Source: Lytechinus pictus
Lineage: Eukaryota
Assembly (NCBI RefSeq): GCF_037042905.1
Contig: NC_087257.1
Span: 10,602,001 to 10,666,000 of the forward strand
Length of the DNA: 64,000 bases
Direction: 5' to 3'
Part shown: piece by piece, positions 40,050-64,000 of the stretch
Numbering within the stretch: position 1 is the stretch's first letter
Layout of the letters: each line of letters starts with the position of its first letter
The notes under the pieces: model-generated
What the model was told of the DNA's origin: nothing
The model's input: the letters and a program-made list of their open reading frames with translations, nothing else
The model's database searches: none
Made by a program: the position numbers and the translations under genes

Positions 40050-41470
40050 CCACTTGGTCTACTCTCAGTTCGTCTTACACCATCATGGCTAAACGCACTT
40101 GTTCTACTAGCAGATGGTCTAACTCTCAGTTCGTCTAACACCATCATGGATAAACGCACTTGTTCTACTAGCAGATGGTCTAACTCTCAGTTCGTCTAAC
40201 ACCATCATGGTTAAACGCATTTGGTCTACTAGCAGATGGTCTAACTCTCACCATCATGGCTAAACGCACTTGTTCTACTAGCAGATGGTCTAACTCTCAG
40301 TTCGTCTAACACCATCATGGCTAAACCCACTTGGTCTACTTGCAGATGGTCTAATTCTCAGTTCGTCTAACACCATCATGGCTAAACGCACTTGTTCTAC
40401 TAGCAGATGGTCTAACTCTCAGTTTGTCTAACACCACCATGGCTAAACCCACTTGGTCTATTTGCAGATGGTCTAACTCTCAGTTTGTCTAACACCATCA
40501 TGGCTAAACCCACTTGGTCTACTTGCAGATGGTCTAATTCTCAGTTTGTCTAACACCATCATGGCTAAACCCACTTGGTCTACTAGCAGATGGTCTAATT
40601 CTCAGTTTGTCTAACACCATCAAGGCTAAATGCATTTGGTCTACTAGCAGATGGTCTAACTCTCAGTTCGTCTAACACCATCATGGCTAAACGCACTTGG
40701 TCTACTAGCAGATGGTCTAACTCTCAGTTTGTCTTAACACCACCATGGCTAAACGCATTTGGTCTACTAGCAGATGGTTTAACTCTCAGTTTGTCTAACA
40801 CCATCATGGCTAAACCCACTTGGTCTATTAGCAGATGGTCTAACTCTCAGTTTGTCTAACACCATCATGGCTAAACCCACTTGGTCTACTAGCAGATGGT
40901 CTAATTCTCAGTTTGTCTAACACCATCAAGGCTAAATGCATTTGGTCTACTAGCAGATGGTCTAACTCTCAGTTCGTCTAACACCATCATGGCTAAACGC
41001 ACTTGGTCTACTAGCAGATGGTCTAACTCTCAGTTCGTCTAACACCATCATGGCTAAATGTACTTGGTCTACTAGCAGATGGTTTAACTCTCAGTTTGTC
41101 TAACACCATCATGGCTAAACCCACTTGGTCTACTTGCAGATGTTCTAACTCTCAGTTTGTCTAACACCGTCATGGCTAAATGTACTTGGTCTACTAGCAG
41201 ATGGTTTAACTCTCAGCTCGTCTAACACCATCATGGCTAAACCCACTTGGTCTATTAGCAGATGGTCTAACTCTCAGTTCGTCTAACACCATCATGGCAA
41301 AACCCACTTGGTCTACTTGCAGATCGTCTAACACCATCATGGCTAAACCCACTTGGTCTATTAGCAGATGGTTTAACTCTCAGTTCGTCTAACACCATCA
41401 TGGCTAAACCCACTTGGTCTACTTGCAGATCGTCTATAACACCACCATGGCTAAATTCACCTGGTCTACT
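40050..41470 (+). repeat. 61-bp minisatellite, ~23 units, made of four ~15-bp subunits
   Basis: Unit accatcatggctaaacgcacttggtctactagcagatggtctaactctcagttcgtctaac starts at 40079, 40140, 40201, 40311, 40372 ... 41441. Confidence 0.95.
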
Positions 41471-42187: not shown

Positions 42188-42282
42188 AATAGTAGACAAA
42201 CCGGTTGTAGATGAAACCATTTGGGATTAGACCAAATGGATTGTAGACCAAATGAGAGTAGACCAAGTGGCAATGTACTCTG

Positions 42283-42346
42283 TCATGCCTCTTTCCTGAA
42301 CTTGATTTTAGCGTTGTCCAAGTACAGACAATCATCGATAAAGTAA
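42283..42346 (-). CDS. PGAP3: PGAP3 terminal coding exon
   Basis: tatacag acceptor; (S)YFIDDCLYLDNAKIKFRKEA* resembles the PGAP3 C-terminus (FLEDDSLYL). Confidence 0.85.
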
Positions 42347-42886
42347 CTGTATAATAAAAGAAAGAAAGGAGAAATTAGCAATGTGCAGAGACAATCATCA
42401 ACAAAGTAACTGCATATTGAAAGAAAAGAAGGTTAAAAAAAGACATTCAGAATGGATTTAACTGATAGAAGAAACAAACGAGAAAGTTTTCATAAGCAAA
42501 ATCATAGATAATGTCTGACTTCCTATTTACTAAACCTCCCTGAAAGGAATGAATTACTTTACACTCCACAAAAATATTATATAAATCATAATCAAATAAA
42601 GATGATAGGGAGTGTTGTATGACATCAACCGCTATCTCATATACGCATCTTATATCTTAGCCTTCTTACTTTTCAACCACTTTTGATGAAATTGTAGGCA
42701 TTGAGCCTGTTTGACTTTCTCTACTTATTTATTATAATAAACATTTTGTTGGGGTAGGCTTAATTTTTTAACATATGATGCATTTCAGATTGACCAACCA
42801 CACAGATATCACCAATGGCATCTTTGAGCCGTTGAAGCTTCTTGGCTTGCCCTAAACAAGAACTTTCATGACATATTACATTTGTA

Positions 42887-43138
42887 GAGGTGCTGTGACT
42901 CGGTGGATGAGTCTCAAGACTTTGAAACACAAGGTCCAGAGTTCAAGTCCCACAGCAGCACTCACGTCCTTTGGCAAGGCATTTATCTACATTTGCCACT
43001 CTCCACCCAGAGTAAATGGATTGTAGTAAATGGATAGCCGGTAAGAAGAAATTTCTTGAATGCTTGAGTCCCAATAAGGGTAGCCATGAAAAGCCGGGGG
43101 TGATGCAGTACTTAGAAACACTGTATTCCGCACTAAAT
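42887..43138 (+). mobile_element. Diverged tRNA-derived SINE
   Basis: tRNA-like head gactttgaaac..GAGTTCAAGTCC, core gtcctttggcaaggcatt..ctccacccagagtaaatgg. Confidence 0.65.
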
Positions 43139-43438
43139 AAAGGCTTGGTCCATCTGCACTTACGGATGCAGAGAGGATGTAAAACGGAAAAGAATCTTGC
43201 AATTCGTTGGAAAACATTATGTAACTGTTGTGTACTCTTTGCATACATGTTTTATATACACTGTATGTTTTCTATATCCATCGAGCATCCGTCTACTATG
43301 ATTTAATTGTTCGCCCATTTTGTCCATTGTCTGGAGCGCTGTATTCGTTATGAATACGTTTTGTGTCCGTTGGCCAGTGGGACGAGGCCTTAATGTTGCA
43401 AATTATAATTACTTCATATATGTTTCTGGAACACCTAC

Positions 43439-43643
43439 CTTGAATAGAGAAATGCTATTGGGATTGTGCTTGCATGCCAGAGAGAGTGGGCATCGAACGT
43501 CCACCAGAGAGGGGGAAAGTCCAACACTTCTAGCAAGAGACAGAGGTTGATCGTCACAACGGATGCGATGGCCTTCCATAGATAAGGCTGCTGTTTTATG
43601 TTCCATAAGCTCCACGCCACAATCAGGATAAAATTCAAAATCG
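43439..43643 (-). CDS. PGAP3: PGAP3 coding exon 6
   Basis: ctacag / gtaggt; LLEVLDFPPLWWTFDAHSLWH (HxxxH motif of Per1/CREST). Confidence 0.95.
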
Positions 43644-44077
43644 CTGTAGATAAAATAATGTAAGAGACATGGAGGGTGGGGCGGCATAAAAGAGAGTAAT
43701 ATCTGTCGTCTATAAGGTCAGTGACTATGACTGATGAAACTAGACGTAAAATTTTTCCATTTATACCAGCTTGGCGTTTACCAGAAAAAAGCTGTCCTGC
43801 CGAGTTCCTACTGGAATTACCATAAACAGAAAAAGAAACAGATCTATTATTGATGGGGATTGGGATGGGAGCGTGAAGTCGGAAAGAAATTTTGATGCTC
43901 TGTAATAGTTCCATACTTTCACATATTGATATCATTGAAGTTACGAACTGCCAAAGAAGAACTGATCGAGAAATGGATAAGAGATCGAACTATTATAGTA
44001 GGCTACCTAAAAGAGGAGGGAAAAGGGAAAAGATGGAAAAAAATATGCAAAGTAAGCAAAGTCCAAGGAGAGAGAGA

Positions 44078-44121
<44 letters not shown>

Positions 44122-45959
44122 GGAGACCAAGGGAGAGAAAGAGAGAAGAGAGGAAGGTATGAGATAGAACAAAAGGGTAATTACAAATTAAAGATAATTA
44201 TAAAATAGGTGTATTATTTCAAGCATCGCGATTGGCCAGTACGCGTCACATGACATCCAACTTCTTTGGTGCACTGCACGGCAGTGCAAAAGGTGCGCAA
44301 CGAAAATTGACATTGCACGCTCAAGCAAACCAATGCGGTAGAAGTCCCGGGAGAAGTCCAACAAAACTGTACTGTAACTTTTTAAGAATTTGTTTCTGTG
44401 TTGCTATTTTATAAAACTAATAATGCACTTGCTCTGTCGTGCGTAAAAGTAAATGCAGAGAAAGCTCGGTTTCTTCAGATGGTGCACACTGGGCACTCGC
44501 CGCCAGCGGCTCGTGCACAGTGCGGCACCTATCTAAAGAAACCTCGCGTGCTCTGCATTTCCACTAACGCTCTCGGCTGCATGCATTATTTGTATAATAC
44601 CAGTTGTGGTAACGATCTCAAAATGACATTACGTCAAACCCCCGTTTGGAGAAAGACCGCAGTTCAGATTGCAAACTGCGGTTCTTTACCCCAAATTTCG
44701 TTAGAAAATCTCAATAACATTTCCAAGCCCTGATAAACCCATCTTGGCCAGGTAATCCCAGTTCACCTCCACAGGCCAGTAAATGCGTTGAGCCAAGGAC
44801 GAAATGATAAACAACAGCTGTGCTATTACGTAAGACTTCTCTGACTGGAGAAGGACCTTCGGAATGAAATTATTGTATTCGATATTTAATCACGTTTTCA
44901 AAGGCATATTATATTCAGACATCCAATATTATTCCATTTTCAATTTCGAACGAATAAAATCGACCTCGAAATAAGGAAGAAAGAAAGAAAGAAAGAAAAA
45001 AAAAAGAAAGAAAGAAAGAAGAAAAAAGTTGCACTTTCACCGCGTGTATACATGGAACTCCATAGCAGGCTCTTAAGACACTCACCAGAACTACACACAT
45101 TGCAATCCATCGTGTGTGCCCCCCCTGCTGTGACTGTATATGCTGGGCTGTTGTGTTATCTTCGGACCGAGGTCAAGAAACAGGTGTTTCTATACTTAAA
45201 TTTCATGCTTGGGGCAATTAGGGTTTGTAGTACTTGGAGAAGAGAATTGAGGAAAAGGAAAACTGGGGTATAGTGTTCTCAAATGGAGGTTTTTCGTCAT
45301 GGAGTGAACAGAATCTAATGAAATTACTACCAAACTGTTTGTATGTATAAATAAAAAAATATGTGCCAAATAGCTCTGGAAGAAAATGCGTAATTGCTGA
45401 GAAATGAGCAAGATAAGCACGGGATTCGATCAAATGTTGGGTATTTTTTCTGAAGCAATATTAATACACTGTCCCACATATGCTTTTCTGTGTTAGTGAT
45501 CATCAGAATTATCGATTTTGAGCTAAGATTTCATGATTTGCAGAGATAATTTTACATTAATGTAACAGATCTAGATGCATGATAATATTTTGACAAGTAA
45601 CCTTGATTTAAAAAGAATTTCTCATGGAATAATAGTTCGCTGCAACTACTGTCTTTTACCTTTACGGGAAAGGGAGTTGGTTGAGGGGGGTAAGAGAGGG
45701 AAGTGGAGGCAAATGCAGAAGGTATGAAAGGAAGAGAAGGAAGAACAGCTTAATATAATTTACTCTTCCAAAATAATGCTGATAGTTAATGTATCTTGCC
45801 AAAGAAGTATTTACTGTAGGAAAATTAAAAAAAAATCAAATTTTTTACATGCTACATCTCCGTCGGGAGTTTGCTCTTCCATATATTTACTTTTTCCATA
45901 TGTATGAATATCAGTTTGCAATAACGTACAATTAACTTTGCTTTGTACCTTTGACTCAC

Positions 45960-46108
45960 CTGTTGTAATATTGACCTTCATATTGTAACCATAATCAAAA
46001 CGAATCAACGCCAGGAAGCAGACGTGTCTGAGGTAGAAAAGAGATGTGACAGCAGCGATTCCTACGGCTACTTTCATGTTCATCCCGTTGTCCCGAACAG
46101 CAAATATT
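45960..46108 (-). CDS. PGAP3: PGAP3 coding exon 5
   Basis: ttctag / gtgagt; RFDYGYNMKVN motif. Confidence 0.93.
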
Positions 46109-46784
46109 CTAGAAATACAGACAAGAAATACCAGCATTTTAAATCAAAATTAGACAAGCATATTAAACCGCAGATAGGAGGGGGGGGCAGAAGATTTGAC
46201 CGCAACCCATTAAATTGGAAGCAAAATTCATTTTGGAATGATGACCTCTTTTGTTACGCTTGTAAATTTTTTTTTTCCGCAGATGAAAAATGTGAGTGAT
46301 GCCCCCCCCCCTTTTTTTGCTTGTCCAATATTTCTGTTATTATGTTATCATTCAAGTAGGCCTGTTTTTCAAGAATACTATGTTGCATTGTGGGTTAGAA
46401 TCCTGGCTAGCTTTCAGTAACTGAGGACTTGAGATGGTGCTACACTACACAAGGCTTTTAGTTCGTATTTGCTTTAAAGAGGTTGCAAGTAAGTTCATAA
46501 ACAAGTTTCCTCTCCACCAGAGAAAAACCTTTTTATTTTTAGTTTTGTCAAAATTAATTCATTCCTACTATACATGTACATACCTGTACATGTATAGCTC
46601 TATAGAGGCCTTCTCTTACTTCTATTCATTTCTATATTCTAATCAATATTCCTTTATTTCAACCTATCATTGGAACGCATCTCTTGATTTTATTCTTTAA
46701 AAAATCAATTATTTTCATTTGTTTATTCAGTACTTGAGTGACCGAACAGCCAAGTGCTGTTTTTCTTAAGGGTTCACACTCTTA

Positions 46785-47002
46785 GGGGGCGTTGCAAGAA
46801 ACGTACGATCAATTGCAAGTCTATTTTCGTTCCCGAAATCAAGCGCCGGGCAATTAATTGTAAACTTGCGATTGATTGCTTATCTGCTCCATGAAACAAG
46901 GAGTGTAATCTTATTTGCCATAGTTAAAAGTGATCAATCAATTGTGTAAAATTGCAACAGAATATTTGCGATTGATTGCAAATATTTTCTTGCAACACCC
47001 CC
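46785..47002. mobile_element. PIF/Harbinger MITE
   Basis: TTA|GGGGGCGTTGCAAGAAA ... TTTCTTGCAACACCCCC|TTA. Confidence 0.85.
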
Positions 47003-47026
47003 TTAGACAATCTGTGAAACACCTAC

Positions 47027-47088
47027 CTTAGTAATGTTGCTGTTAAGCCGGACAAGACAAGAGAATACGCACAATAGTAGTCCATTTT
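47027..47088 (-). CDS. PGAP3: PGAP3 coding exon 4
   Basis: ctccag / gtaggt; KMDYYCAYSLVL. Confidence 0.92.
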
Positions 47089-48127
47089 CTGGAGAAGAAA
47101 AAGCAGATCACAGTGAAATAATTTTGACATTTGTTTAGTTCACTCCCTTCAAGCCTTCTAATATTTCTCTTTCTTTCATTGGATTCGATGAAATTTCCTT
47201 TGCGTTCATCCTTTAAAGGACAAGGCCAACCCAACAAAAAGTTGATTTGAATAAAAAGAGAAAAATCAACAAGCATGACACTGAAAATTCCATCAAAATC
47301 AGATGTAAAATAAGAAAGTTATGACATTTTTAAAGTTTCGCTTAATTTTACAAAACAGTTACATGCACATCCTGGTCGGTATGCAAATGAGGAAACTGAT
47401 GACGTCATCCACTCAATATTTATTTTGTATTTTATTTTCTAATGTTCTCATCATTGTCAAGTGAAACAACGATTAATTCCTAGGTTTAAAACCTAGGTTT
47501 AACACAAATTTATACAAGAATTTTAAAACCACACTTATATGGAATGCTGGGCTTCGTAAATTATCTTTCTTATTAGTAGCAATTATAATGTATCAATTCA
47601 TTATTCAAATTCATAATATTTTTGCATTTTGTTATTCTTTCCATTTCATGACTCTGTGAATTTTTCATTTGACAACTTTTTGCAGCAGGATAAGAATAAT
47701 TTTAACTGGTGAATGACACTAAGAACTTGCACTCCATAAAAGAGTGCCAGTTAAACCCGGTTTAATTAAACCATGGCTATCATAAAATACCAACCATTAC
47801 ATATAAAACTGTACAATACAGCTATCCATTCAAAATACAAAAATTTAAACCTGTCCCCATCTAAATATGCTGGCACTGCCACAGCTCTTTTTCAAGGAGT
47901 GATATTTAAAGAATGCAAGTGATTTCATGAGGCAAAACTAGTAGAATGTACAAATCAGGATACTTGAAAAATCAGAAACTTACAACCACAACACTAATCA
48001 GAACTATACTGCTACCTTATATACTACTTTTGATTCTTGTTATATTCATAATAAATATATAGAAATCGGGTTGACAAGAAAGAATTTTTCAAATCATGTA
48101 ATAATTGTGAAAGAGAACAAAACACAC

Positions 48128-48190
48128 CTCTGTCCAGGCTAAATCTCTGGAGTGGAAGACTGTTGACCATATCCAAGCATTTACTGCAAT
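48128..48190 (-). CDS. PGAP3: PGAP3 coding exon 3
   Basis: caacag / gtgtgt; NAWIWSTVFHSRD (SxxxH motif). Confidence 0.93.
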
Positions 48191-48201
48191 CTGTTGAAAT
48201 C

Positions 48202-48234
<33 letters not shown>

Positions 48235-48267
48235 AAAGAAAGTTTGAAAACCTATTGAATGTCTAGA

Positions 48268-48576
48268 CAGGGTTCCCACAGTGATTTGAAAACAGAATTC
48301 CATGACTTTTCCATGACTAAATTGCTACTTTCCATGAATTTCCGGGAGTTATGTAGAATTTGGGATGTCACAAAACTGGGAAAAATGGAAATCATGACAC
48401 CAATTATAATAGCAGAATATGATCACAGAGTATGAGAGTTGCGAGACATGACAAACTGGAAAGCTGCCATAGCCAAGAGGTAAATGCAATTCCATGACTT
48501 ATCACAAATTTTCCAAATTCCCTGACTTTCCATGATCAAATTTTTTCCAGGATTTTCCATGACTGTGGGAACCATG
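48268..48576. mobile_element. MITE with 5-bp TSD (hAT5-like)
   Basis: CAGGGTTCCCACAGT / ACTGTGGGAACCATG, TSD CTAGA, TTCCATGA subterminal repeats. Confidence 0.8.
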
Positions 48577-48586
48577 CTAGATTGAT

Positions 48587-50762
48587 GTCGAATGTCTAGA
48601 TTGATAGGAGAGTCATTTTTAACCTATAACTTTCATATAAAGAAACCGAACACCGTTATTCCTATTTTCTTTGATTTGGCACCACAAGAGAAGACAATAG
48701 AACTGTAGAGACATACGATTTTCATTTCTAAATTAAGAACCCATTCGCCATATGACCAATGGGTGAGAAAGAAAGTTTGAAAACTTGTCGAATGTCTAGA
48801 TTGATAGGAGAGTCATTTTTAACCTATAACTTTCATATAAAGAAACCGAACACTATTATTCCTATTTTCTTTGATTTGGCACAATAAGAGAAGATATGGA
48901 ACTTTAGAGACAAACGATTTTCATTTCTAAATTAAGAATCCATTCGCCATATGACCAATGGGTCAGAAAGAAAGTTTGAAAACTTGTCGAATGTCTAGAT
49001 TGATAGGAGAGTCATTTTTAACCTATAACTTTCATATAAAGAAACCGAACACTGTTATTCCTATTTTCTTTCATTTGGCACAATAAGAGAAGATATGGAA
49101 CTTAAGAGACAAACGATTTTCATTTCTAAATTAAGAATCCAATCGCCATATGACCAATGGGTGAGAAAGAAAGTTTGAAAACTTGTCGAATGTCTAGATT
49201 GATAGGAGAGTCATTTTTAACCTATAACTTTCATACAAAGAAACCGAACACTGTTATTCGTATTTACTTTGATTTGGCACCACAAGAGAAGACAATAGAA
49301 CTTTAGAGACATACGATTTTCATTTCTAAATTAAGAATCCATTCGCCATATGACCAATGGGTGAGAAAGAAAGTTTGAAAACTTGTCAAATGTCTAGATT
49401 GAGAGGAGAGTCATTTTTAACCTATAACTTTCATATAAAGAAACCGAACACTATTTATTCCTATTTTCTTTGATTTGGCACAATAAGAGAAGATGTGGAA
49501 CTTTAGAGAAAAACGATTTTCATTTCTAAATTAAGAACCCATTCGCCATATGACCAATGGGTCAGAAAGAAAGTTTGAAAACTTGTCGAATGTCTAGATT
49601 GATAGGAGAGTCATTTTTAACCTATAACTTTCATATAAAGAAACCGAACACTGTTATTCCTATTTTCTTTGATTTGGCACCACAAGAGAAGACAATAGAA
49701 CTGGAGAGACATACGATTTTCATTTCTAAATTAAGAACCCATTCGCCATATGACCAATGGGTGAGAAAGAAAGTTTGAAAACTTGTCGAATGTCTAGATT
49801 GATAGGAGAGTCATTTTTAACCTATAACTTTCATATAAAGAAACCGAACACTATTATTCCTATTTTCTTTGATTTGGCACAATAAGAGAAGATATGGAAC
49901 TTTAGAGACAAACGATTGTCATTTCTAAATTAAGAACCCATTCGCCATATGACCAATGGGTGAGAAAGAAAGTTTGAAAACTTGTCGAATGTCTAGATTG
50001 ATAGGAGAGTCATTTTTAACCTATAACTTTCATATAAAGAAACCGAACACTATTTATTCCTATTTTCTTTGATTTGGCACAATAAGAGAAGATATGGAAC
50101 TTTAGAGACAAACGATTTTCATTTCTAAATTAAGAATCCATTCGCCATACGACCAATGGGTCAGAAAGAAAGTTTGAAAACTTGTTGAATGTCTAGATTG
50201 ATAGGAGAGTCATTTTAACCTATAACTTTCATATAAAGAAACCGAACACTATTTATTCCTATTTTCTTTGATTTGGCACAATAAGATAAGATATGGAACT
50301 TTAGAGACAAATGATTTTCATTTCTAAATTAAGAATCCATTCGCCATATGACCAATGGGTGAGAAAGAAAGTTTGAAAACTTGTCGAATGTCTAATTTGA
50401 TAGGAGAGTCATTTTTAACCTATAACTTTCATATAAAGAAACCAAACACTGTTATTCCTATTTTCTTTGATTTGGCACCACAAGAGAAGACAATAGGACT
50501 TTAGAGACATACGATTTTCATTTCCAAATTGAGAATCCATTCGCCATACGACCAATGGGTCAGATAGAAGTTTGAAAACTTGTTGAATGTCTAGATTGAT
50601 AGGAGAGTCATTTTTAACCTATAACTTTCATATAAAGAAACCAAACACTGTTATTCCTATTTTCTTTGATTTGGTACCACAAAAAGAGAAGACTTATGGA
50701 ACATTAGAGAAATACAATTTTCATTCCAAATAAAAAATCCATTCGCCATATATGACCAGTGG
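48587..50762 (+). repeat. ~199-200-bp satellite, 11 units, in a PGAP3 intron
   Basis: gaatgtctagattgatagg recurs at about 48590, 48790, 48989, 49188, 49388, 49588, 49788, 49987, 50187, 50386 and 50585. Confidence 0.97.
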
Positions 50763-51028
50763 GTATCTCCTCTAAAAACTGTACCCACTCAAATAATTTT
50801 CCTGGTATCGGATTGCAATGTGCTCCACCTTTCTTTTTCTTAAAGACTGCTACACAAAAAGTAATTTGTGTAGTATAAATAGTTTACAAAGGACTGTACA
50901 GAAAGTAGTTGAGAGCTATTTTATGACCAAAATTCTAATCATATTTGGGGGAAAAAATATTCCCCATCACTCATCTGTTAATAACGCATCATGTATGCTA
51001 TATTAAATGAAAAAGAAGACTCTTTTAA

Positions 51029-51952
51029 GGACGTTCCACAGTTAAAGTGAAATCCATGTCATTTTCACCAAACTTTGCACATAGATACTTTAGAACCTGA
51101 ATATTCGAAATATGCAAGAATTAACATAGGTCCATGTGCTTGATTTTTTGCTAGAGGGCTTCAAAGTTCACCCAACTGGATGTTCTTAAGAATTGCGCAT
51201 TCAAAAGAATTTGTCATTTTTAGACCTCGCAAGATCACTACAATGAATTTAAACCTCCATTACTCAGTCAAAATACATGAAAAAGTCATCAAATTTCACA
51301 AGAGAGTTAATAATTGTATCGTTAGAATGGAGAATCTGTTTATACTGCTATTTGTTTACAATAAACAGCACTGTCAGTTCTTAAAAATGGCGTAAAAGAT
51401 AACAAAAACCCAATCTCAAAAATGTGAAATTTCAATAACTACAAAAGGACAATAAATGCTGCACTTTATTCAAAATCCATGTCATTTTTACCACCATTTG
51501 CAAAGTTGTAGAGGAAGGTATACCTAAGAGGTGCAAACATTAAAAAATAGGGGTTCATGTGCTTGTTTTCAAATTTTTACCATTTTTACTAGAGCAAATG
51601 TGCTATTTAAAACACCAAAAATGCGCCAAATGCTTTGTATCTATGTGCAGAAAAAATCAAATCCACTCTACCATTTATTCAAACTCGGGGTTATATTCGT
51701 GATTCTTGGCAGCACTGCAGAGTAAAGTATTATGAAATTGTAGAGATATTTTTTTTAATGGTCCATGGAATAATTCCAGTTTTTTAGCTTCATAAAATAA
51801 CGCATCGGATCTGCAGTTCGAGTGCAGATGATGAGAAAAATCAGTTCATACCCACAGCTAATTAATCACCTGTTCATCCATTGTGACATCAGCGCGCAGA
51901 GTGTAAAATATGTGCTGATTATAATGCGCACAAACATAACTGTGGAACGTCC
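51029..51952. mobile_element. TTAA-targeting (Kolobok-like) non-autonomous element
   Basis: TTAA|GGACGTTCCACAGTTA ... TAACTGTGGAACGTCC|TTAA. Confidence 0.85.
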
Positions 51953-52126
51953 TTAAGATTTAATAATTATATTTAAGATATATACATGTATCATATAAGA
52001 TTCTTTAAGATTGAATAATTATATTTTTCACTGAGTTATGATAAACATCAATAATTCTCAATTACATTCTCGTTTTGTTTTTTTAGTTTTTATGGACACA
52101 CTGTTTAACACTTCTACAATACTTAC

Positions 52127-52279
52127 CATACCCTGTGCTAAACCAACGTAATACATGGGTGCTGTATTAGGAACCTTCTTTCTCAACTGGAAAATATTGA
52201 AGACTTGAGCGAAACCATTAGCGATAGAAAAGATGACAGATGCCGGTTCCTGGACTCCTAATATTCTGATAAAGGGCCA
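52127..52279 (-). CDS. PGAP3: PGAP3 coding exon 2
   Basis: tttcag / gtaagt; WPFIRILGVQEPASVIFS. Confidence 0.95.
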
Positions 52280-52594
52280 CTGAAAAAAAATCAAGTACAT
52301 GGAATTTGTTACCTAAACTTATCTTACAATGAAGTATAAAACTTGAGTATTATATCACTGAAAATCACAAAATTCAAACTTTCCTCCTCCTAAACTTTTT
52401 CAACATTACTGTACCAGGGCAGTTCTGAAGCCAAGCAGTTTAAAAGGCAAATCCACTTATTTTCTTTCAAATGAAAATTATCATTTAAACTTATACTCAT
52501 TTCAATGACATCTAAAATAAATCTAAGGTGGACACATTACATATATTCCAAAATATATCGGGCATTGCAAGCAAATGTAGAAGGAAATATTTTA

Positions 52595-53600
52595 CTTCTT
52601 ATTATCTTCCCCTCAATCCTTTCCTCATTTTCCTTCTCCTTCATCATTTTCTTTCTCCCCCTTCTCCTTCTTTTTCCTCACTCACCATCTTCTTCTTCCT
52701 CCTCCTTCTCTCCCTCTTCCTCCTCCTTTTTCTTTTTACTCCTACGTCATCTTCTTCTTCCCCCTCCTCCTTCTATTCCTTCTCCTTCATCTTCTCCTCT
52801 TCTTCTCTTCCTCCTCCCCTCCTTTTTTCCACCTTATTCATCTTCTTCTTCCTTCTCCTCATCCTATTCATCTCCTTCCTTCTCCTCCTTCTTCCCCCTC
52901 CTCCCATTTCCTTCTCCTTCATCTTCTCATATTTTTCTCTCCCTCCTGCTCCTCCTTCCCTTTTCCACCTCATTCATCTTCTTCCTTCTCCTCATCCTAT
53001 TCACCCCCTCCTTCTCCTCCTTTTTACTCCTTCATCATATTCTTCTTCCTCCTCCTTCTACTTCCTTCTCCTTCATCTTCTTCTCTCCCTCCTTCTTTTT
53101 TCCACCTCATTTATCTTCTTCTTCCTTCTCCTCATCCTATTCATCCACTCCTTCACCTCCTTCTTCCCCTCCTCCTATTTCCTTCATCTTCTCATCTTCT
53201 TCTCTCCCTCCTGCTCCTCCTTTCTTTTTCCACCTCATTCATCTTCTTCCTTCTCCTCATCCTATTCACCCCCCTCCTCCTCCTTTTTACTCCATCATAT
53301 TCTTCTTCCTCCTTCTTCTATTTCCTTCTCCTTCATCTTTTCATCTTCTTCTCTTCCTCCTCCCCCTCCTTCTTTTTTCCACCTCATTCATCTTCTTCTT
53401 CCTTCTCCTCATCCTATTCATCCCCCTCCTTCTCCTTCTTTCTCCTCCTCCTCCTTCATCTTATTCCTCCTTTTCTTTCCTTCTCCTTCACCACTTTCTT
53501 CCTCCTCCCCTCCTCCGTTCATCTTCTCCCTCCCCCTCCTCACCCTCCTTAATCTTCTTCTTCTTTCTCCTCCTTCTTCTTCTCTTCCTTTTCCTCCTTT
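52595..53600. repeat. ~1-kb CT-rich low-complexity tract with ~130-150-bp higher-order repeats
   Basis: Almost G-free + strand; ttccacctcattcatcttcttccttctcctcatcctattca recurs at ~52828, 52963, 53100, 53229 and 53378. Confidence 0.9.
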
Positions 53601-53661
53601 AACCAGTTTATTCACAGATAATCACTCAAGAATCACAACCTTCATTTTCTCTAATATTTAC

Positions 53662-53976
53662 CTTGCCATAAAACTGTGGAATGGAAGAAATGGGGGTCCC
53701 CTCCCTGATCAGATGACTGACTGTTGTCCACATCGACAGGTAGCGGCACTCATGTTTACAGTCCCAGCCAAGCATCCACAGTACTAGGGGTTGGTCTCCA
53801 TGGAAGTGATTCAGCTGCTCCGGGGTGCTACAGTTCTGGTTCAGGCATGCACGAAGAAGGTTTCTGTGAACCTTGTGACGGTCACCTTCTGAAGCAATGA
53901 CTTCTTGCAGAAGACACAGAATCGATCCCAGGATGAGGATTATGATGTATGGATAGGTCTTCCAGGTAGGCTTCAT
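53662..53976 (-). CDS. PGAP3: PGAP3 (Per1-like GPI remodelling protein) first coding exon
   Basis: Signal peptide, ASEGD, CxxxNC, GWDCKHECRYLSMW, PQFYGK, gtaaat donor; an upstream acceptor at ~54012 implies a 5'UTR exon further right; total CDS 1011 nt = 336 aa. Confidence 0.95.
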
Positions 53977-57025: not shown

Positions 57026-57483
57026 TCTTACCTAATAGATCTATATAGTATGTGTGCCAAAAATGGCTTCTCGTGACTAATTGCCAAATAGACATAAATT
57101 AAGAAGAAGGGTAGACGATCGCGATGCAAATGCAATCCTCCTTTTTTTAGAAATTGGCCAACATCATGAACATCAAATGAAATAGGTGGGACTGAGCAAA
57201 AATCAACAGCAACAACTAAATGACTCTCAAGTAACAATTTCGCCAGAATATCACATAAAATTGTAATACTAATATCTTTAAAATTACAATGCCCATAAGA
57301 CCTTAAGAAATAAGTTAATTGCCGGGAAAAAAAAGAAGAAAATGCTCATTTTACCTTATTCCTAATTTTCTTGCACTGCGGCTCTTAAACTTAGCGACAA
57401 ATAAACGTACCTTGTGCTCGCTGCATAAATTCCTCTTTTGTCTTTCGTTGTATGGTATTGGCAATTAGTCATATTTGGCCATA

Positions 57484-57668
57484 ACTGGGCGTTGTGGCGT
57501 GCGCCTGTAATCCAAGCTGAGCTGTGGGGAGGGGAAGTTACAAATTGATGCAGAGGTTCGAGCCCTGGTCACGTCTTTCGGATGGTGACGTTAAAGGTCG
57601 GTCCCAGACGTAAATAATCATATCTGATTGATACACGTCTGACAAAACTCAAATACACACACACACAC
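57484..57668 (+). mobile_element. SINE-like element with a 7SL(SRP)-Alu-domain-like head
   Basis: ACTGGGCGTTGTGGCGTGCGCCTGTAATCCAAGCT head, B box GGTTCGAGCCC (57555-57565), Deu-like gtctttcggatggtgacgttaaa, 3' stem-loop, (CA)n tail, flanks TGGCCATA/TGACCACA. Confidence 0.65.
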
Positions 57669-58976
57669 TGACCACAGAGAGTTATTTGTCTACTACGCCA
57701 CTGACATAGTTCGGTTTATTTGATTGTCTACATAATTATTTGTACATCAGGAATTATGATTTACATCCGGCCTCCGACCTTTAACGTCACCCCATTCTAA
57801 AGAAATACCACTGTCGTATAGATGAAGGGGGGGGGGTCAGGGGAATTAAGCCCCCCCCCCCCCAAAAAAAAAAAAAAAAAAAAAGCTCACATAGTGACAA
57901 AGGAAACAATTAGGATAAAAAGAAAAGGAATGGAAGAAGTTGGAATGTGATATTATTTGCTGAATATCACAATATTAGCTTTTTGATCGAATCAACATTG
58001 TCGAAATTCTAGCTCTTGAATTAATTGTACTGACTTTTTAGAAGTTTGGTCGGTGGATCCCGGCGGTCCCTCGAAACGTTGGCTCACTTTGAAAGACGTT
58101 GCACTGGTCTAGACCTCTGTATAATATTCGTAACTGTGTTGCTTGGATTACGGGCATGCAAAGTTTAGGTGTCCTGTGAATCAATTCATTTATTTTCCGC
58201 TTGCATTCTTTTTTCATATTTAAAAAGTTCGACATTTATATTACAAAAATCCAATTTTGCCATAGATTTTCACATAACATTCAGAAAATGATATCATATT
58301 TCAAGCTTTTCTGTTTCCTTCAGTTCTTTCCTTTTCTCTTGGTCGTAAGAAAATGGGGAGGGGCAAATAAGCGCCCCCTTCCATCTCAGTATGCCACAGT
58401 TACTGGATATATATCCTAATAGTTGCACACAAGCGCGTTTCTATATCGACTAAAAAATTTGAAGTGCTTAATCAGGTGGCTAGTATGATGTGACGATATC
58501 CTATGACGACATTGCCTAAACAAAGGGATGAAATATACTTACAGAGTAGGGAATTGACCAAGTTTTGGGGTTTTCTGAATTGTTCATGAAGAGGAAACAT
58601 TATCTCAATCAAATAGCCCTATATAGTGCGTACGCGAAGCGCGAGGTGATTTATTATTTTTTTATTTTAATTCAGACATGAAAATGGGGCATTTAAATCG
58701 ACAGGCAATCCTCTCTTATTTTCAATTTTGTCCCTTCTCATTTTTCCCCAACGTTTTTTTAACCTCTATATACAGTCTATACTCTTAAGAGTTGTCTCTT
58801 CACTTTCCCCCATTTTATATGCGCCGTCATGCAGCGGACCGCGGCCCCTATATTGGTATCACTAATTTGGCAAACAAATCAGTTAAAACTTGAAAACTAA
58901 TCGGGAAGTCGCTAAATTCCCCAGGCTTAATTCGATTATTTCAGCTGAAACAACTACAAGAGGGCCTATCCTATAA

Positions 58977-59201
58977 AGGACGCACCATTAATCCAGGGGA
59001 GGGGCTTGAAGTAATAAAAAAAAAACTTTACTCGCCATCAGAGTAAAAAAAAACTTGGTCCTCTTGATCTACATCTGAAAGGTGAAAAAAAATCTGTCTC
59101 AATGGAGAAAGGAAAACAAAAACTTTGCTCAAAGATGAAAGGGAAAAAATGCATCGACCCAAACTTCTAGCCCCCCCCCTGAGTATCTAATGGTGCGTCC
59201 C
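58977..59201. mobile_element. PIF/Harbinger MITE
   Basis: TAA|AGGACGCACCATTA ... TAATGGTGCGTCCC|TAA. Confidence 0.75.
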
Positions 59202-59680
59202 TAAATCGATAGTAGATAGCATATCAGATTCGGTAGGCCTATACGTGGGGGAAACCTTGGATACGTTTGAAGACTGGAAAAAAATGTAGGCTTTATAATA
59301 ATTATATAATTAGTGAGCATTATCTCGTTCACACAGGGAGACCGTGGCGACATGGTATCGTAGGTATGCTATTGAACTTTGTCTTTTCTAATTGAGATAA
59401 AAATTCGATCAATTTCTGGAGAAAATAAAATCATCCCTGAAATGGGGGAACAATTATATATATAAAAAATAAAAATCACTCTTTCCTTCCCATCCAGCAA
59501 TCCCTATATCCTGATTGATCGCTACTCGCCTGGCCTTTTTTTCATGCAGTCTTAGTTTGCTTGGAGGTCTCAGTGGATCATGCCTGGTTTTGATTTAGCT
59601 AGACATGAACGATTTTATGAAATAATTTGAGTTTGTTATTTTAAATTACATTTTGTTACCAGTAAAATAAATTGATTTAA

Positions 59681-60128
59681 AGGAGAATAAAACCTTTGGA
59701 ACAAGTGGGCTTGTGTGGAAAGAGAAGAATGAAAGAATACGATCAAAGAAAATTTGAGAAAAATCGGACAGATAATGAAAGAGAGTTATGAGCATTTCTT
59801 TGGGATCACTAATGCTATGGAGATCCTCCCATTAGCAATGCGACAAATATGTCACATGTGAACAACTTTTTCTTTGATGGACTAAGACACCCCCAAAATG
59901 TCTCTTTGTGCTCTTTCTTATGGTGATTTAAACGCTTTATCCATAATGTATTCTTTGAAAATCTGTATTACATGCCTATATACAGAAATAAACATGATCT
60001 AAACTTTAAATGCTCATAACTTTCTTATTGCATAGGCCTATTCATATTTTCTCAAACTTTTGTTGATCTGTTTCTTTAATTGTTCTGTTTTCAAACAAGC
60101 TATCTTGTTCCAAAGGTTTCATTTTCCT
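59681..60128. mobile_element. TTAA-targeting MITE (near full-length member of the 10590 family)
   Basis: TTAA|AGGAGAATAAAACCTTTGGAACAAG ... CTTGTTCCAAAGGTTTCATTTTCCTTAA. Confidence 0.8.
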
Positions 60129-61089
60129 TAAATATTTAATATGACCATAGCATTTTTAAAACTCTATCTAATAGGGAAAATCACCTGTCTGAAAAAGGGA
60201 AAAAACTTTGTTTTTTTTTTCACACATTTTTAAGAGGCCAGATTAAGCTTTTTATAAAATATTATAATTTTCTCCTCCTTGTCAAGTGAAACAAAGTTTC
60301 ATTTCTCCCTGAACAAGTGGAATTACCATTGTTTGATACTATATGGTTCAGTCAAGTTGGTCCTTATTGTCAAATCTATAAAAAAAATGAAATATTGTAT
60401 AATTCAAACAATAAAAACAAAAGAAATAGTGAGTGATGGACATCATGGACTAACTCACCTAGTTGTGCATATCACTATTTTGTGAAAAATAAGCGAAACT
60501 TCAAAATGTCAATACTTTCTTATTTTACATCCGATTTTGATGAAATTTTCAGCACTATGCTAGTTTGATTTTTCTCTATTTATTCAAGTCAGCATTTGTC
60601 TGTCGTGGACTTGACCTTTAAATATGGTGGTTTCTTTCTTTCCCCCCACCCCCTATTTTTTTTTCTAATTGGAATACAGTACAGTTTGTTTACAGTATCC
60701 GTTATTTATTTACATTTTGTGACTTTTCGTACACCGTGTATAGTCGGTCTTCTACTTTTTTACACGCTACTTTCACCATCTCGAAATTGGTCGCTAGTAA
60801 TAGATAAGACCGAGCACCCGCGGCAATTATGCCATGAACGTGAGTGTGCTGCTGGCCGCCGGGTCAGCGCCCCGCTAGCTAAGGCCCGGCTTCCCCATGC
60901 TATACTGTACTGTACTGTAGCTATAGCTACTAGCACTCGATCGCTGGCGCAACATTATTCTTGCTTTGGGACTGGGAACGTTGAAGAACGGAGCGCGAGT
61001 TCGAGGTGATATTTAGCTATTTCTTCGAGGACCGGTATTGTATTGTGGATATATATTCGACTCTGAAAACTTGTCATCCCCAATCAGAA

Positions 61090-61203
61090 ATGGCAGAGAG
61101 TGACTTAAAAGACAATGAAGAAAAAGACTCTGGAGAATCAGATGATCGCGGGTCAATTTTGCATGTTGTTGTGGTCGGTTTTCATCACAAGCGAGGATGC
61201 CAG
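61090..61203 (+). CDS. AVL9: AVL9 (DENN-related late secretory pathway protein) exon 1; gene continues beyond the window
   Basis: ILHVVVVGFHHKRGCQ matches the AVL9 N-terminal motif VLHIVVVGFHHKKGCQ; donor gtacga at 61204. Confidence 0.88.
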
Positions 61204-61357
61204 GTACGAATTTACGATTGCTCTCTCGCCTCGTCCGCGCCGCCGGTGGACGTAGCGGCGGATCCGGTGCCTGGTACCTCAGCTCAGCCTCAGGCGATCG
61301 GGTTCTGATATTACTAGGCTCCACTACACTTCACTACCGCTACCCTCCGCTCTAGCC

Positions 61358-62257
61358 TACCTCAAGCGATGTTCGTACAGGCTCCACTCCACTTCACTAC
61401 CGGCTACGCTCCACCTACCCGAACATCGAGCCTGTGATTCACAGGAGTTCACAGTGTTCACAGTGTGAACTCGTTTGGATACTTTGTCTTTGAGAGGCAA
61501 AGCCAAAGGTGGGAAAAAAAAAAATTATTGTAAAAATTATAGTAGGCCCTAGGCCTAGGCCTAATCCTATACCTACCGTAACGATAAAAAAAATAGCTTA
61601 ATTTCTTACTCTACACCTGTCCCTAGCCTTATTTCATTCCGTGTCCATCCTCCGATTATCCTCAAAATTGGTGATTTTGGGCCAGTATCTAATTCCTCAC
61701 ATGTAATTATTCACGGCCGATTTCAAAACATCGCATGCGATCATGCGAGGGTCGCAGGTCAAACAGCATGAATATATATTGGATGGCTCCGAAAATACCA
61801 GAAATATTCTAAGTAAGAGTTTGGGAAAATATTCCACGAATCAGTGGAATATTTTCCCAAACTCTTTTTCTCGTATTTTCTGAGCCATCCAATATATTAT
61901 AATATAAATATTCATGCTGTTTGACCTGCGAACCTCGCATGCGATGTTTTGAAATCAGCAGTGAATAATTACGTGTGAGGAATTAGATACTGGCCCAAAA
62001 GGCCAAAATCACCAATTTTGAGGATAACCGGAGGATGTACACGGAGTGAAATAAGGGTGTAGACTAGAGTAAGAAATTAAGCTATTTTGCTTTCTCGTAA
62101 TATTTTTTTCTATAATTTTTACAATAAATATCTTTTTTTTCCCACCTTTGCCTCTCGGAGTATCCGAACGAGTTCACGGGCTCGATGTTCGGGTAGGTGG
62201 AGCGTAGGGTAGCGGTAGTGAAGTGGAGTGGAGCCTGTACGAACATCGCTTGAGGTA
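61358..62257. repeat. ~900-bp imperfect palindrome in AVL9 intron 1
   Basis: tacctcaagcgatgttcgtacaggctcc... mirrored by ...ggagcctgtacgaacatcgcttgaggta; centre gagtttgggaaaatattccac-gaatca-gtggaatattttcccaaactc at ~61841. Confidence 0.92.
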
Positions 62258-62599
62258 CCCTCCGCTCCACCTATGAAAGAATGATCGGAGGGTAGCTGTA
62301 ATGAAATGTAATGGAGCCTATCCAAACCCTCGCCTGAGTTGAGGTAGGTGCCTGGCGTGGCAGAAACGGTATTAGTACTGGCCATGGCCATGCCGGCGGA
62401 TCGTGGTCCAACATTCACAACTCCAGCGGATTCAGTACCAATTTCTCTTTGGCAGATATCGCTCTTGCTATTATTCATGCACGTATCGTATACGTCACGT
62501 GGTACGTGTCTGCGTGCGATAGATCTATCTCAAAGACAAAGACTTGAAAGAGTCAAAGTCAACGATCAACCGGGTCAACCCCCGCCCCCCCCCCCCCCC

Positions 62600-63053
62600 C
62601 AGTAGAGGTGCACAGCCAATATAGGAGACTATCTCCCATGAGAGAGATTATCTCCAATGTCAGAGACTTTTGTAAAGAATTTGGGTATCCAATAGGCCAA
62701 TTTCAGAGACAGTGTCCAGTTTGGGTGACCAATTTCCTTTGTTTACATTTGCTGCAAAAGGATTACCTTGGCGGCAAATAAAAATGTGATAGGCAGATTC
62801 CTCATGAAAAATTACCCCTTTTCACAGTCTACTTCAAAAATTCACCGTCTACTTTTGTTTTGATAAGGATTGTTGTAATGTTGTCATCCACACAAAACAA
62901 ATGGGCTTCTGACCTCAGTGAGACAAATTTTAGATGGAAAAAATTATGCTTTTGTTGGTGTTGTTCTTTTGTTCTCTTGCAAAGCAAGTCTCCAATATGG
63001 GAGATTGTCTCCTGTATTGGAGAGTCTCCCATATTGGCTGTGCGCCTCTACTG
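62600..63053. mobile_element. hAT-like MITE inserted in a poly-C run
   Basis: CAGTAGAGGTGCACAGCCAATAT / ATATTGGCTGTGCGCCTCTACTG with C runs on both flanks. Confidence 0.75.
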
Positions 63054-64000
63054 CCCCCCCCCATCGCGATATTGCCAGAGCCGCGCTGCCGAGGCACTAC
63101 ACTAGACTTGTGCGAGGTTGGTAAGTATTAGTATTTTCTAACCTCGCACACAGATCCACGTTTGGCAGTGGATTTCTAACTAGTGGGTCGCGCGTGCTGC
63201 GATGCGATGCCACTTCTGGCGTGCATTACACACGACTTCTATTGCTTGATTTTTCTGTGCGCGGCGGCATGTGATGAACCCTTGAAGGCTGCCGAGGGTG
63301 ACGTCATAATTAATAGATCTGCACATAGTCAATCTGAACCAAATCTGCAAACATCAAACCCGGCGGACATGGTTCCAAGTCATGCAAGTAAACTATGAAC
63401 GATATTTGCCGTTAAGAACGATATCTGCCAGCGCGTGGATACCGTATCCGCCGATGGACAAATCCGCCGCTACACCGGTCCGCGCCGCGACCCTAGTGCT
63501 CGCTTGCACTCTAGTCAGTGTGGCTTGAAACAATGGCACCAATAAAAATCTATGATGGGGGGGGGGACCTAAAGATACGCACTTTGTTACAACCAATAAA
63601 ACTATGACATTTAAAATATATTTCCAAGTTGTCTTTCATACTCTACTTTGTCGTAATATACTTTGTGGTAATATTCTAAACCCAGACATTATTGGACCAA
63701 GAAAAAATATCACAAAACTCGCGTTCTAACTTTGCAGTGTAATACAAAAATCTTTCCGTGTTTTCCGAACACCTCTTGATTTTGCCGCCCGATATAAGAA
63801 GGAGTCTTAAAGCTACACACTCGATTTATCATGCAAAGAAAAAGTATTTCCTGAGCCTCAATTTGTAAAATATGTTCAAATTGTTAGGTACCGTAGATAA
63901 ATATTAAATTATAGTGAATATAACTCAAAAATTCCAAACATTTACAGGTTTTCTCTGCTTTTAGTGATTTTATGCAGCCTCTGCTGAAAAAACTTGATAG

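What the first reader, a model, noticed from the sequence alone, without database searches (positions are those of the whole stretch)
57484..57668. Candidate 7SL(SRP)-RNA-derived chimeric SINE in an invertebrate genome
Seen: the first 35 nt (ACTGGGCGTTGTGGCGTGCGCCTGTAATCCAAGCT) match 27/35 positions of the human 7SL/Alu 5' domain as I recall it. They keep the GGGCG:CGCCT helix and the UGUAA turn, the SRP9/14-binding motif. A Pol III B box follows at about +72, roughly Alu-like spacing. Next come a segment resembling the start of the Deu domain (gtctttcggatg..gacgt.aaa), a 3' stem-loop and a (CA)n tail. The element is bracketed by TGGCCATA/TGACCACA, a 6/8 TSD with both differences transitions. 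No 7SL S-domain follows, so it is not an SRP gene. Established: 7SL-derived SINEs are rare, known to me from Alu/B1 in Euarchontoglires and a hagfish family. Inference: this may be an independent origin of an Alu-like, SRP9/14-hijacking retroposon in an echinoderm-like genome.
Basis: partly seen in the sequence, partly recalled or inferred. Interest (0 to 1): 0.85.

Follow-up and report, generated by a model that had tools for sequence, protein, structure and literature searches.

The report
Sea-urchin SINE with 7SL-derived head
A 185-base mobile element in the painted sea urchin (Lytechinus pictus) starts with a copy of the first ~50 bases of signal-recognition-particle (7SL) RNA, a kind of 'Alu-like' head so far described only in a few vertebrate lineages, and a second copy in a sister species shows that it has moved.

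Summary
Window 57484-57668 reads as quoted. Its first ~55 nt are the only significant Rfam match: Metazoa_SRP, 5' Alu-domain helices H2-H3-H4 with the UGUAAU turn. There is no S domain and no tRNA or 5S hit.

The window is Lytechinus pictus, 3.6 kb upstream of a PGAP3-like gene.

A second full-length copy lies in an L. variegatus PGAP3 intron. It has the same 7SL-like head, spacer, B box, body and tail, and is 94.6% identical apart from one 10-nt indel. The orthologous L. pictus site is empty and carries a single CATAA. So this is a mobile family, not a one-off chimera. A decayed third relative sits at about 58071-58162(-).

From the B box to the tail, the element recurs at 83-91% identity in three marine-metagenome contigs. 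Their heads are different and not 7SL-like. The head was therefore swapped onto an existing SINE body.

Unresolved:
- Copy number: only one further copy in 265 kb sampled.
- The host's own 7SL sequence.
- Repbase/Dfam status.
- The partner LINE.
- Whether the core is a Deu/Nin domain.
- SRP9/14 binding.

Unlike Alu, B1, Urop and the hagfish SINE1, only the 5' half of the Alu domain is kept.

The parts
57476..57483 (+). Putative 5' target-site duplication, TGGCCATA
   Evidence: Matches 57669-57676 at 6/8. Chance rate is 0.8% at exact boundaries and 3.2% with 0-3 nt of slack. There is no empty-site confirmation for this copy.
57484..57539 (+). 7SL (SRP RNA) 5' Alu-domain-like head. H2 5' strand ACU; H3 GGGCGU../..GCGCCU with loop containing UGGC; UGUAAU turn at 57506-57511; H4 UCC/GGA with a loop enlarged by 10 nt; H2 3' strand AGU.
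   Evidence: cmscan Metazoa_SRP: 24.5 bits, E=2e-4. The L. variegatus copy gives 29.3 bits, E=5.8e-6, with canonical loop sizes. No tRNA found.
57540..57552 (+). Spacer ACAAATTGATGCA of unknown origin, between the 7SL-derived part and the B-box module
   Evidence: Identical but for one base in the L. variegatus copy. Recognisable in the decayed copy at 58071-58162.
57553..57572 (+). T-arm-like hairpin carrying a canonical Pol III B box, GGTTCGAGCCC (57555-57565). This is where the module shared with SINEs that have other heads begins.
   Evidence: Alignment of five copies. The stem keeps pairing through changes on both sides in 3 of 4 pairs.
57573..57604 (+). Conserved central core, GTCTTTCGGATGGTGACGTTAAAGGTCGG(TCC)
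   Evidence: Nearly invariant in five copies. Also shared at ~77-80% identity by unrelated partial elements at 57723-57815(-) and L051:6142-6193. So it behaves like a shared SINE central domain.
57605..57641 (+). 3' stem-loop, CAGACGU...ACGUCUG, with an inner AAUCAU/GAUUGA stem. Presumed recognition site for the partner LINE.
   Evidence: Predicted in the single-sequence fold and in the consensus fold of five copies. The pairs are conserved and show little variation.
57642..57668 (+). A-rich linker ACAAAACTCAAAT followed by the (AC)7 simple-repeat tail (57655-57668)
   Evidence: Relatives end in (AC)3, (CA)n or (CAAC)n.
57669..57676 (+). Putative 3' target-site duplication, TGACCACA
   Evidence: See 57476-57483.
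58071..58162 (-). Probable old, decayed relative with the same chimeric order: GCCCGTAATCCAAGC, then GTTACGAAT spacer, then CAGAGGT..ACGTCTTTC. Most of H3 is missing.
   Evidence: Local alignment score 21, against a maximum of 15.5 in 1478 control tiles of the window. nhmmer E=0.05 in 329 kb. Marginal but top-ranked.
57723..57815 (-). Partial copy of the central core from another, 5'-truncated SINE in inverted orientation. Not part of the element. It explains the weak 'MIR8562' long-hairpin hits.
47735..47739 (+). Empty target site (CATAA, within cttgcactc^cataaaag). This is orthologous to the L. variegatus insertion of the same SINE.
   Evidence: L. variegatus reads ggcactcTATAA[ACTGGGCG...ACACAC]CATAAAAGTG. 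L. pictus reads ttgcactcCATAAAAGAG.

Best explanation
This is a copy of a real, recently mobile SINE family of Lytechinus sea urchins with a composite head.

The first ~47-56 nt derive from the 5' end of 7SL/SRP RNA: the Alu-domain 5' fold H2-H3-H4 with the UGUAAU turn. This piece is joined through a 13-nt spacer to an older SINE module. That module consists of a T-arm-like hairpin with a canonical B box, a conserved central core, a 3' stem-loop and a simple-repeat tail.

Proposed mechanism:
1. RNA polymerase III transcribes the element from an internal promoter. The promoter uses an A-box-like stretch in the 7SL-derived part and the B box at +72.
2. The 3' stem-loop and (CA)n tail are recognised by the reverse transcriptase of a still unidentified non-L1 LINE.
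3. Target-primed reverse transcription inserts the copy with a short (5-8 bp) duplication.
4. The 7SL-derived 5' fold may also bind SRP9/14 and bring the RNA to ribosomes that are making the LINE protein, as proposed for Alu.

Shown here: the sequence and structure similarity to SRP RNA, the family status, the presence/absence polymorphism between species, and the modular head swap.

Inferred: Pol III transcription, LINE dependence and SRP9/14 binding.
For: - SRP similarity. Metazoa_SRP is the only significant Rfam hit on both full copies: E=2e-4 and E=5.8e-6, 29.3 bits. Both alignments start at model position 1 and cover H2, H3, the turn and H4. In H2 both consensus G-C pairs are A-U pairs here, so pairing is kept.
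- No tRNA or 5S signal from ARAGORN or cmscan.
- Second copy. L. variegatus L065:13907-14073(-) is 158/167 identical plus one 10-nt indel. It has the same start, the same spacer and the same junctions.
- Empty site. The orthologous L. pictus site carries a single CATAA.
- The window copy keeps the state seen in the relatives at all 5 body positions where the L. variegatus copy differs, so it looks young.
- Head swap. The module from the B box to the tail recurs at 83-91% identity in three metagenome contigs. Their heads are different and give no SRP hit.
- A decayed third copy with the same order of parts lies at 58071-58162(-).
Against: - Only 46-56 nt are 7SL-like. Both scores are far below the Rfam gathering score of 70.
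- The fold is no more stable than shuffled sequence (z=+0.9).
- The 3' half of the Alu domain (the helix 5 strands), kept by every described 7SL SINE, is absent.
- Only one further full copy was found in 265 kb of other Lytechinus DNA, so the family may be small.
- The TSD of the window copy is imperfect (6/8), although the copy otherwise looks young.
- The host's own 7SL gene was not available for comparison.
- No partner LINE was found.
Confidence: 0.75

Rival explanations
1. The 7SL-derived piece serves only as a promoter and 5' end (A-box region and defined start). SRP9/14 and ribosome docking play no part in mobilisation.
For: Only the 5' half of the Alu domain is kept. In the window copy the H4 loop is enlarged by 10 nt, and two H3 pairs are mismatched. 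Folding energy is unremarkable. Relatives with other heads share the same body and tail, so the body/tail module can evidently work with other heads.
Against: H2, H3, the invariant UGUAAU turn and the H4 stem are all retained in two copies. The loop residues that form the tertiary loop-loop contacts in SRP RNA (GG in the H3 loop, C in the H4 loop) are present. From established knowledge, not tested here: the 50-nt 5' domain alone can bind SRP9/14 (SA50 complex, Weichenrieder et al. 2000).
Confidence: 0.4
2. The copies are sporadic chimeric retrocopies rather than a self-propagating SINE. On this reading, a LINE reverse transcriptase copying an ordinary SINE RNA switched template to 7SL RNA.
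For: Template switching to small RNAs is a known source of chimeras (discussed in PMC7245038). The 7SL part ends exactly at the RNA's 5' end. Copy density is low.
Against: Two copies at unrelated sites in two species share the same 7SL breakpoint and the same 13-nt spacer, with one base different. They also share the same junction with the B-box module. A third decayed copy has the same order. Independent switches would not reproduce this.
Confidence: 0.05
3. The resemblance to 7SL is fortuitous. The head is a diverged tRNA-derived sequence or a GC-rich sequence of unknown origin.
For: The match is short and below the Rfam gathering score. The following module has a tRNA-type B box and T-arm. 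Relatives have heads with A/B-box-like motifs.
Against: Scaling the E-value of 5.8e-6 (802 nt searched, 4227 families) to this one family over a ~1-Gb genome, both strands, gives about 0.003. That is my own calculation. The match starts at model position 1 and keeps all three helices and the turn. No tRNA signal was found on the head. The relatives' heads give no SRP hit.
Confidence: 0.07

Closest known systems
SINE1-1_EBu (Ebu1-1), hagfish Eptatretus burgeri (Kojima 2020, PMC7245038)
   Same: A 7SL-derived head grafted onto an older SINE body. Not L1-dependent in design: it has a structured 3' region and a simple-repeat tail. It arose independently of Alu/B1.
   Different: The hagfish element keeps both the 5' and the 3' 7SL segments (a complete Alu domain). 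It has a bipartite RTE-derived tail with (AAC)n and about 2,400 copies, and its host is a vertebrate. The sea-urchin element keeps only the 5' ~50 nt and takes its B box from a T-arm-like module. It ends in (CA)n. Its LINE partner and copy number are unknown.
Alu / B1 / FLAM-PB1 (Euarchontoglires) and Urop (shrew mole; 10.1101/2024.08.25.609555)
   Same: The 5' end corresponds to 7SL position 1 onward, with H3, the UGUAAU turn and H4. The S domain is absent. The B box lies at a similar distance (+72 here; 76-86 in human 7SL according to PMC7245038).
   Different: Those elements consist solely of 7SL sequence (5' plus 3' parts), have poly(A) tails and use L1. This element lacks the 3' Alu-domain strand, has a tRNA-type B box and a foreign body, and has no poly(A).
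Tree-shrew Tu type II/III and other 7SL-tRNA composite SINEs (cited in PMC7245038 and 10.1101/2024.08.25.609555)
   Same: 7SL-derived and tRNA-type sequence are combined within one SINE.
   Different: Those descend from the single supraprimate 7SL SINE lineage and are dimers or trimers of near-complete units. Here a 7SL fragment replaces only the 5' part of one monomer's head.
Sea-urchin SINE2 families with conserved central domains (SINE2-1/2/3_SP: Meta, Deu/Nin, CORE; PMC4824008, PMC5804259)
   Same: Same host group. The element is modular, with a conserved central core shared between families and a simple-repeat tail.
   Different: All of those are described with tRNA-derived heads.

Membership tests
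SRP RNA gene (Rfam RF00017 Metazoa_SRP) | Full-length match at or above the gathering score (70 bits), including the S domain | tested here: not met
   24.5 and 29.3 bits. Only model positions ~1-47 are matched and the central ~230-250 positions are deleted. It is not an SRP gene.
SINE (SINEBase definition, PMC3531059) | Short (<1 kb) interspersed, non-tandem repeat | tested here: met
   167-185 nt. Copies lie at unrelated sites in L. pictus and L. variegatus.
SINE (SINEBase definition, PMC3531059) | [quoted passage not shown] | not testable with these tools
   No tool searches a host genome by DNA. In 265 kb of sampled Lytechinus DNA there was one further full copy. That is compatible with anything from tens to thousands of copies.
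SINE (SINEBase definition, PMC3531059) | At least 60% identity with tRNA, 5S rRNA or 7SL RNA over at least 60 nt | tested here: not met
   Identity to the Rfam Metazoa_SRP consensus is about 74% (34/46, my count), but over only 46-56 nt. The host 7SL was not available.
SINE1 (7SL-derived SINEs: Alu, B1, Urop, SINE1-1_EBu) | 5' part derived from the 5' end of 7SL RNA | tested here: met
   Metazoa_SRP is the only significant Rfam hit, the match starts at model position 1, and H2/H3/turn/H4 are kept.
SINE1 (7SL-derived SINEs: Alu, B1, Urop, SINE1-1_EBu) | Retention of the 3' 7SL segment, so that a complete Alu domain (with the helix 5 strands) can form. Human positions ~267-299 are shared by all described families (PMC7245038). 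| tested here: not met
   After the H2 3' strand, the cmscan alignments have no credible match to the model (low posterior). The following sequence is a spacer plus the T-arm/B-box module.
SINE1 (7SL-derived SINEs: Alu, B1, Urop, SINE1-1_EBu) | Evidence of retroposition: copies at different loci, flanking duplications, empty orthologous sites | tested here: met
   The L. variegatus insertion is flanked by TATAA/CATAA, and the L. pictus site is empty with one CATAA. The window copy is flanked by a 6/8 8-mer.
SINE1 (7SL-derived SINEs: Alu, B1, Urop, SINE1-1_EBu) | SRP9/14 binding by the Alu-domain RNA | not testable with these tools
   Only the sequence and structure prerequisites can be seen: the UGUAAU turn, H3, H4 and the loop G/C residues.
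SINE2 (tRNA-derived SINEs) | Head recognisably derived from a tRNA | tested here: not met
   ARAGORN finds none, and cmscan gives no tRNA hit at E<=10 on the element. Only a T-arm-like hairpin with a B box remains.
DeuSINE / Nin-domain superfamily | Central domain homologous to the Deu/Nin consensus | not testable with these tools
   No Deu/Nin consensus is held by any tool or readable supplement. The core does behave as a domain shared between SINE families.

The most novel reading that the evidence does not exclude
This would be a fourth independent origin of a 7SL-headed SINE, and the first outside vertebrates. Only the 50-nt 5' domain of the SRP Alu domain (the minimal SRP9/14-binding module) would have been captured, onto a LINE-dependent SINE body. 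That would imply that this minimal module is enough to give a retroposon an advantage with a non-L1 partner.
Probability: 0.3. Interest if true: 0.8.

Novelty: new variant of a known kind. Interest (0 to 1): 0.62.

Why it matters
SINEs that start from 7SL RNA are regarded as exceptional. The literature found here counts three origins, all in vertebrates: supraprimates, a shrew mole and hagfish. Their parallel retention of the Alu domain is the main comparative argument that SRP9/14 binding helps SINEs capture LINE machinery.

A sea-urchin family would add an invertebrate origin. It keeps only the 5' half of that domain, borrows its B box from another module and uses a non-L1-type tail. Lytechinus is easy to handle experimentally, for example by embryo injection and in transgenic lines. 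That would allow a natural test of which part of the Alu domain matters.

If the family proves to be tiny or already catalogued, it is just one more composite SINE.

Tried and rejected
- Whole-window Rfam scan at gathering thresholds and ARAGORN: nothing.
- Self-BLAST of the element in the window: only the core fragment at 57746-57803 and a weak hit at ~58150.
- Pattern scans for the head:
  - Viral contigs: none.
  - Genome contigs: none with the strict pattern. The looser pattern gave 12 hits, about the number expected by chance, with no extended similarity.
It gave 47 loci, of which 3 were true relatives. The head itself could therefore not be searched there.
- Empty-site test for the window copy: impossible. 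L. pictus / L. variegatus collinearity stops at window 57379 = L065 4320, 105 bp before the element.
- Sampling of 12 further Lytechinus loci (265 kb) found only the L065 copy and no 7SL gene.
- Partner LINE: L022 carries an 835-aa reverse-transcriptase ORF 0.7 kb upstream of its SINE copy. That LINE appears to end in a (CATTGT)n run before the SINE, so I rejected it as a demonstrated partner. Its homologues are all unnamed metagenome proteins, so the organism of L022 stays unknown. L072:14514-14550 is a weak tail-like hit that led nowhere.
- 'tRNA-derived' status of the relatives' heads: not demonstrable. The best hit was tRNA-like mascRNA at E=1.8.
- Deu/Nin consensus: not obtainable, because no supplements are held.
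- Literature searches for sequence strings and for an echinoderm 7SL SINE: nothing relevant.
- The MIR8562 'hits' are just the hairpin formed by two inverted SINE cores, and lie far below threshold.

Full report
**Observation**

A permissive Rfam scan of 57300-57900 gives one significant match, Metazoa_SRP (RF00017), at 24.5 bits and E=2e-4.

The alignment runs from model position 1. It covers helix 2 (ACU...AGU), helix 3, the UGUAA turn and helix 4, then deletes the whole S domain. The whole-window scan at gathering thresholds finds nothing, and ARAGORN finds no tRNA.

- a canonical B box, GGTTCGAGCCC, at +72 (57555-57565);
- a 3' stem-loop at 57605-57641;
- an (AC)7 tail at 57655-57668.

The flanking 8-mers TGGCCATA and TGACCACA match 6/8. 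In this window that happens by chance at 0.8% of positions with exact boundaries, or 3.2% with a little slack.

**Host and context**

A single-exon galactosyltransferase ORF at 18192-19481(-) is 94% identical to a Lytechinus pictus protein.

Window 42000-63976 is 100% identical to L. pictus assembly GCA_037042905.1, chromosome record CM073238.1 (locus L064).

A PGAP3/Per1-like gene occupies 42286-53907 on the minus strand. The element lies about 3.6 kb upstream of its first coding exon, in repeat-rich intergenic DNA.

**It is a family, and it has moved**

The orthologous L. variegatus locus (L065, GCA_018143015.1) contains a second full-length copy at 13907-14073(-), inside a PGAP3 intron. The two copies compare as follows:
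- both start with the same ACTGGGCG;
- both have the same 7SL-like head, and the same 13-nt spacer with one base different;
- both have the same B-box module, core, stem-loop and (AC)n tail;
- they are 158/167 identical, plus one 10-nt indel in the helix 4 loop.

The L. variegatus head scores higher against Metazoa_SRP (29.3 bits, E=5.8e-6), with canonical loop sizes. Both G-C pairs of the consensus helix 2 are A-U pairs here, so pairing is kept.

The insertion site reads:
- L. variegatus: ggcactcTATAA[element]CATAAAAGTG
- L. pictus (window 47726-47745): ttgcactcCATAAAAGAG

The L. pictus site has no element and a single CATAA, so it is a clean empty site. The family was therefore active after, or around, the split of the two species.

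The two copies differ at five body positions. At four the window copy has the base shared by all three outside relatives. At the fifth it has the base of two of them, and the third shares the L. variegatus base. The window copy has 10 CpGs, with an observed/expected ratio of 0.90 against 0.73 for the window as a whole. So it looks young.

A third, decayed relative with the same order of parts lies 0.5 kb away on the other strand, at about 58071-58162. Its local-alignment score is 21, against a maximum of 15.5 in 1478 control tiles. nhmmer gives E=0.05.

**Copy number**

No tool searches the host genome by DNA. I fetched 12 further Lytechinus loci (265 kb) through protein look-ups. Apart from L065, none holds a copy with this head. 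The family may be modest in size, and the number is not known.

**Chimeric origin**

A scan of metagenome contigs for the core 17-mer found three true relatives: L031, L042 and L022. They match the element from the B-box module to the tail at 83-91% identity.

Their 5' parts are different. They contain A-box-like and B-box motifs, give no SRP hit and give no significant tRNA hit.

In the five-copy alignment, homology begins at the T-arm-like hairpin, whose stem shows compensatory changes. It becomes almost invariant from GTC(A/G)CGTCTTTCGG onward.

The central core alone also occurs in other partial elements: 57723-57815(-) and L051:6142-6193. The simplest reading is that a 7SL 5' fragment replaced the front of the head of an existing SINE. 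Kojima proposed the same for the hagfish SINE1 (PMC7245038).

**Mechanism**

Shown:
- the similarity to the SRP Alu 5' domain;
- the modular structure;
- mobility.

Inferred:
- transcription by RNA polymerase III from the 7SL-derived A-box region and the B box at +72;
- recognition of the 3' stem-loop and simple-repeat tail by a LINE of the 'stringent' type;
- insertion by target-primed reverse transcription with 5-8 bp duplications.

More speculative is binding of SRP9/14 to the 5' fold. The prerequisites are present: the UGUAAU turn, H3, H4 and the loop G and C residues. It is established knowledge, not tested here, that the 50-nt 5' domain alone can bind SRP9/14.

Against a structural role:
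- the fold is no more stable than shuffled sequence;
- the window copy has an enlarged H4 loop.

**Comparison and membership**

It is not an SRP gene, because it falls below the gathering score and has no S domain.

It works like a SINE1, but differs from every described one. Alu, B1, Urop and SINE1-1_EBu all keep both the 5' and the 3' 7SL segments. This element keeps only the 5' ~50 nt.

It also falls short of SINEBase's formal requirement of a 60-nt overlap with 7SL (PMC3531059). I therefore call it a SINE with a composite head whose 5' part is 7SL-derived. It is not a standard member of SINE1.

The Deu/Nin label for the core could not be tested.

**Novelty**

Kojima (2020, PMC7245038) states that well-defined SINE1 families are known only from Euarchontoglires and hagfish. 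Kosushkin et al. (2024, 10.1101/2024.08.25.609555) count three independent origins, all in vertebrates.

My literature searches found no echinoderm or other invertebrate case. Repbase and Dfam could not be queried, so an unpublished entry cannot be excluded.

**Verdict**

Copy number, the host 7SL comparison, database status, the LINE partner and SRP9/14 binding remain open.

Noticed in passing
window 57379/57380 versus L065 4320: Collinearity between L. pictus and L. variegatus upstream of PGAP3 stops abruptly here. L. variegatus continues into a GC-rich stretch and what looks like the first exon of another gene (ATGGAATCTTTTTCTACTGAA...). That sequence is not found in window 57380-64000. This is either a rearrangement or an assembly difference.
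   Followed up: partly
window 48586-50764: An array of ten or more copies of a ~200-bp unit lies inside a PGAP3 intron. All its units match one ~150-bp stretch of L. variegatus (L065 12590-12738) within collinear sequence. This suggests a tandem expansion specific to L. pictus.
   Followed up: partly
window 39956-41464: Tandem array of a 61-bp unit (about 22 registers, up to 94% identity between units). It has a related inverted segment at 42222-42270.
   Followed up: no
window 61358-61402 and 62213-62257 (with nested pairs 61612-61680/62003-62071 and 61675-61740/61935-62000): A perfect 45-bp inverted repeat, 810 bp apart, with further nested inverted repeats. It looks like a foldback or TIR-type transposon.
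   Followed up: no
window 57851-57885, 22213-22256, 308-347, 6466-6509, 62583-62622: A recurring run of about 13 C followed by a long A run or other sequence. At 57816-57885 it is preceded by a G9 run. It may be the end of another repeat family.
   Followed up: no
window 16825-17010, 38734-38958, 47209-47436, 60457-60641 and others: A dispersed repeat family beginning TTAAAGG(A/G)..., present in both orientations at 75-90% identity. One copy (47209-47436) is an L. pictus-specific insertion next to the empty SINE site.
   Followed up: partly
L065 22457-22528: ARAGORN calls a tRNA-Thr(CGT) just downstream of PGAP3 in L. variegatus. It lies in a ~200-bp stretch with no counterpart in the window, and it did not reach the Rfam tRNA gathering score. 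It may be the head of a tRNA-derived SINE.
   Followed up: no
L049 1489-1560; L050 3082-3153 and 3597-3668; L071 6476-7363 (three); L068 7736-7807: High-scoring tRNA matches (55-61 bits), several with the same score (60.9 bits), near galactosyltransferase paralogues in L. variegatus. They are either tRNA gene clusters or young tRNA-headed repeats.
   Followed up: no
L022 215-2722 and ~3130-3190: A metagenome contig with a SINE relative also carries an 835-aa LINE reverse-transcriptase ORF that ends in a (CATTGT)n run. All close homologues are unnamed metagenome proteins, so the source organism is unknown.
   Followed up: partly
window 52505-53787: Long CT-rich low-complexity tract giving spurious ORFs of 365-419 aa on the plus strand. 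It overlaps the region of the first coding exon of the minus-strand PGAP3-like gene (53662-53907).
   Followed up: no
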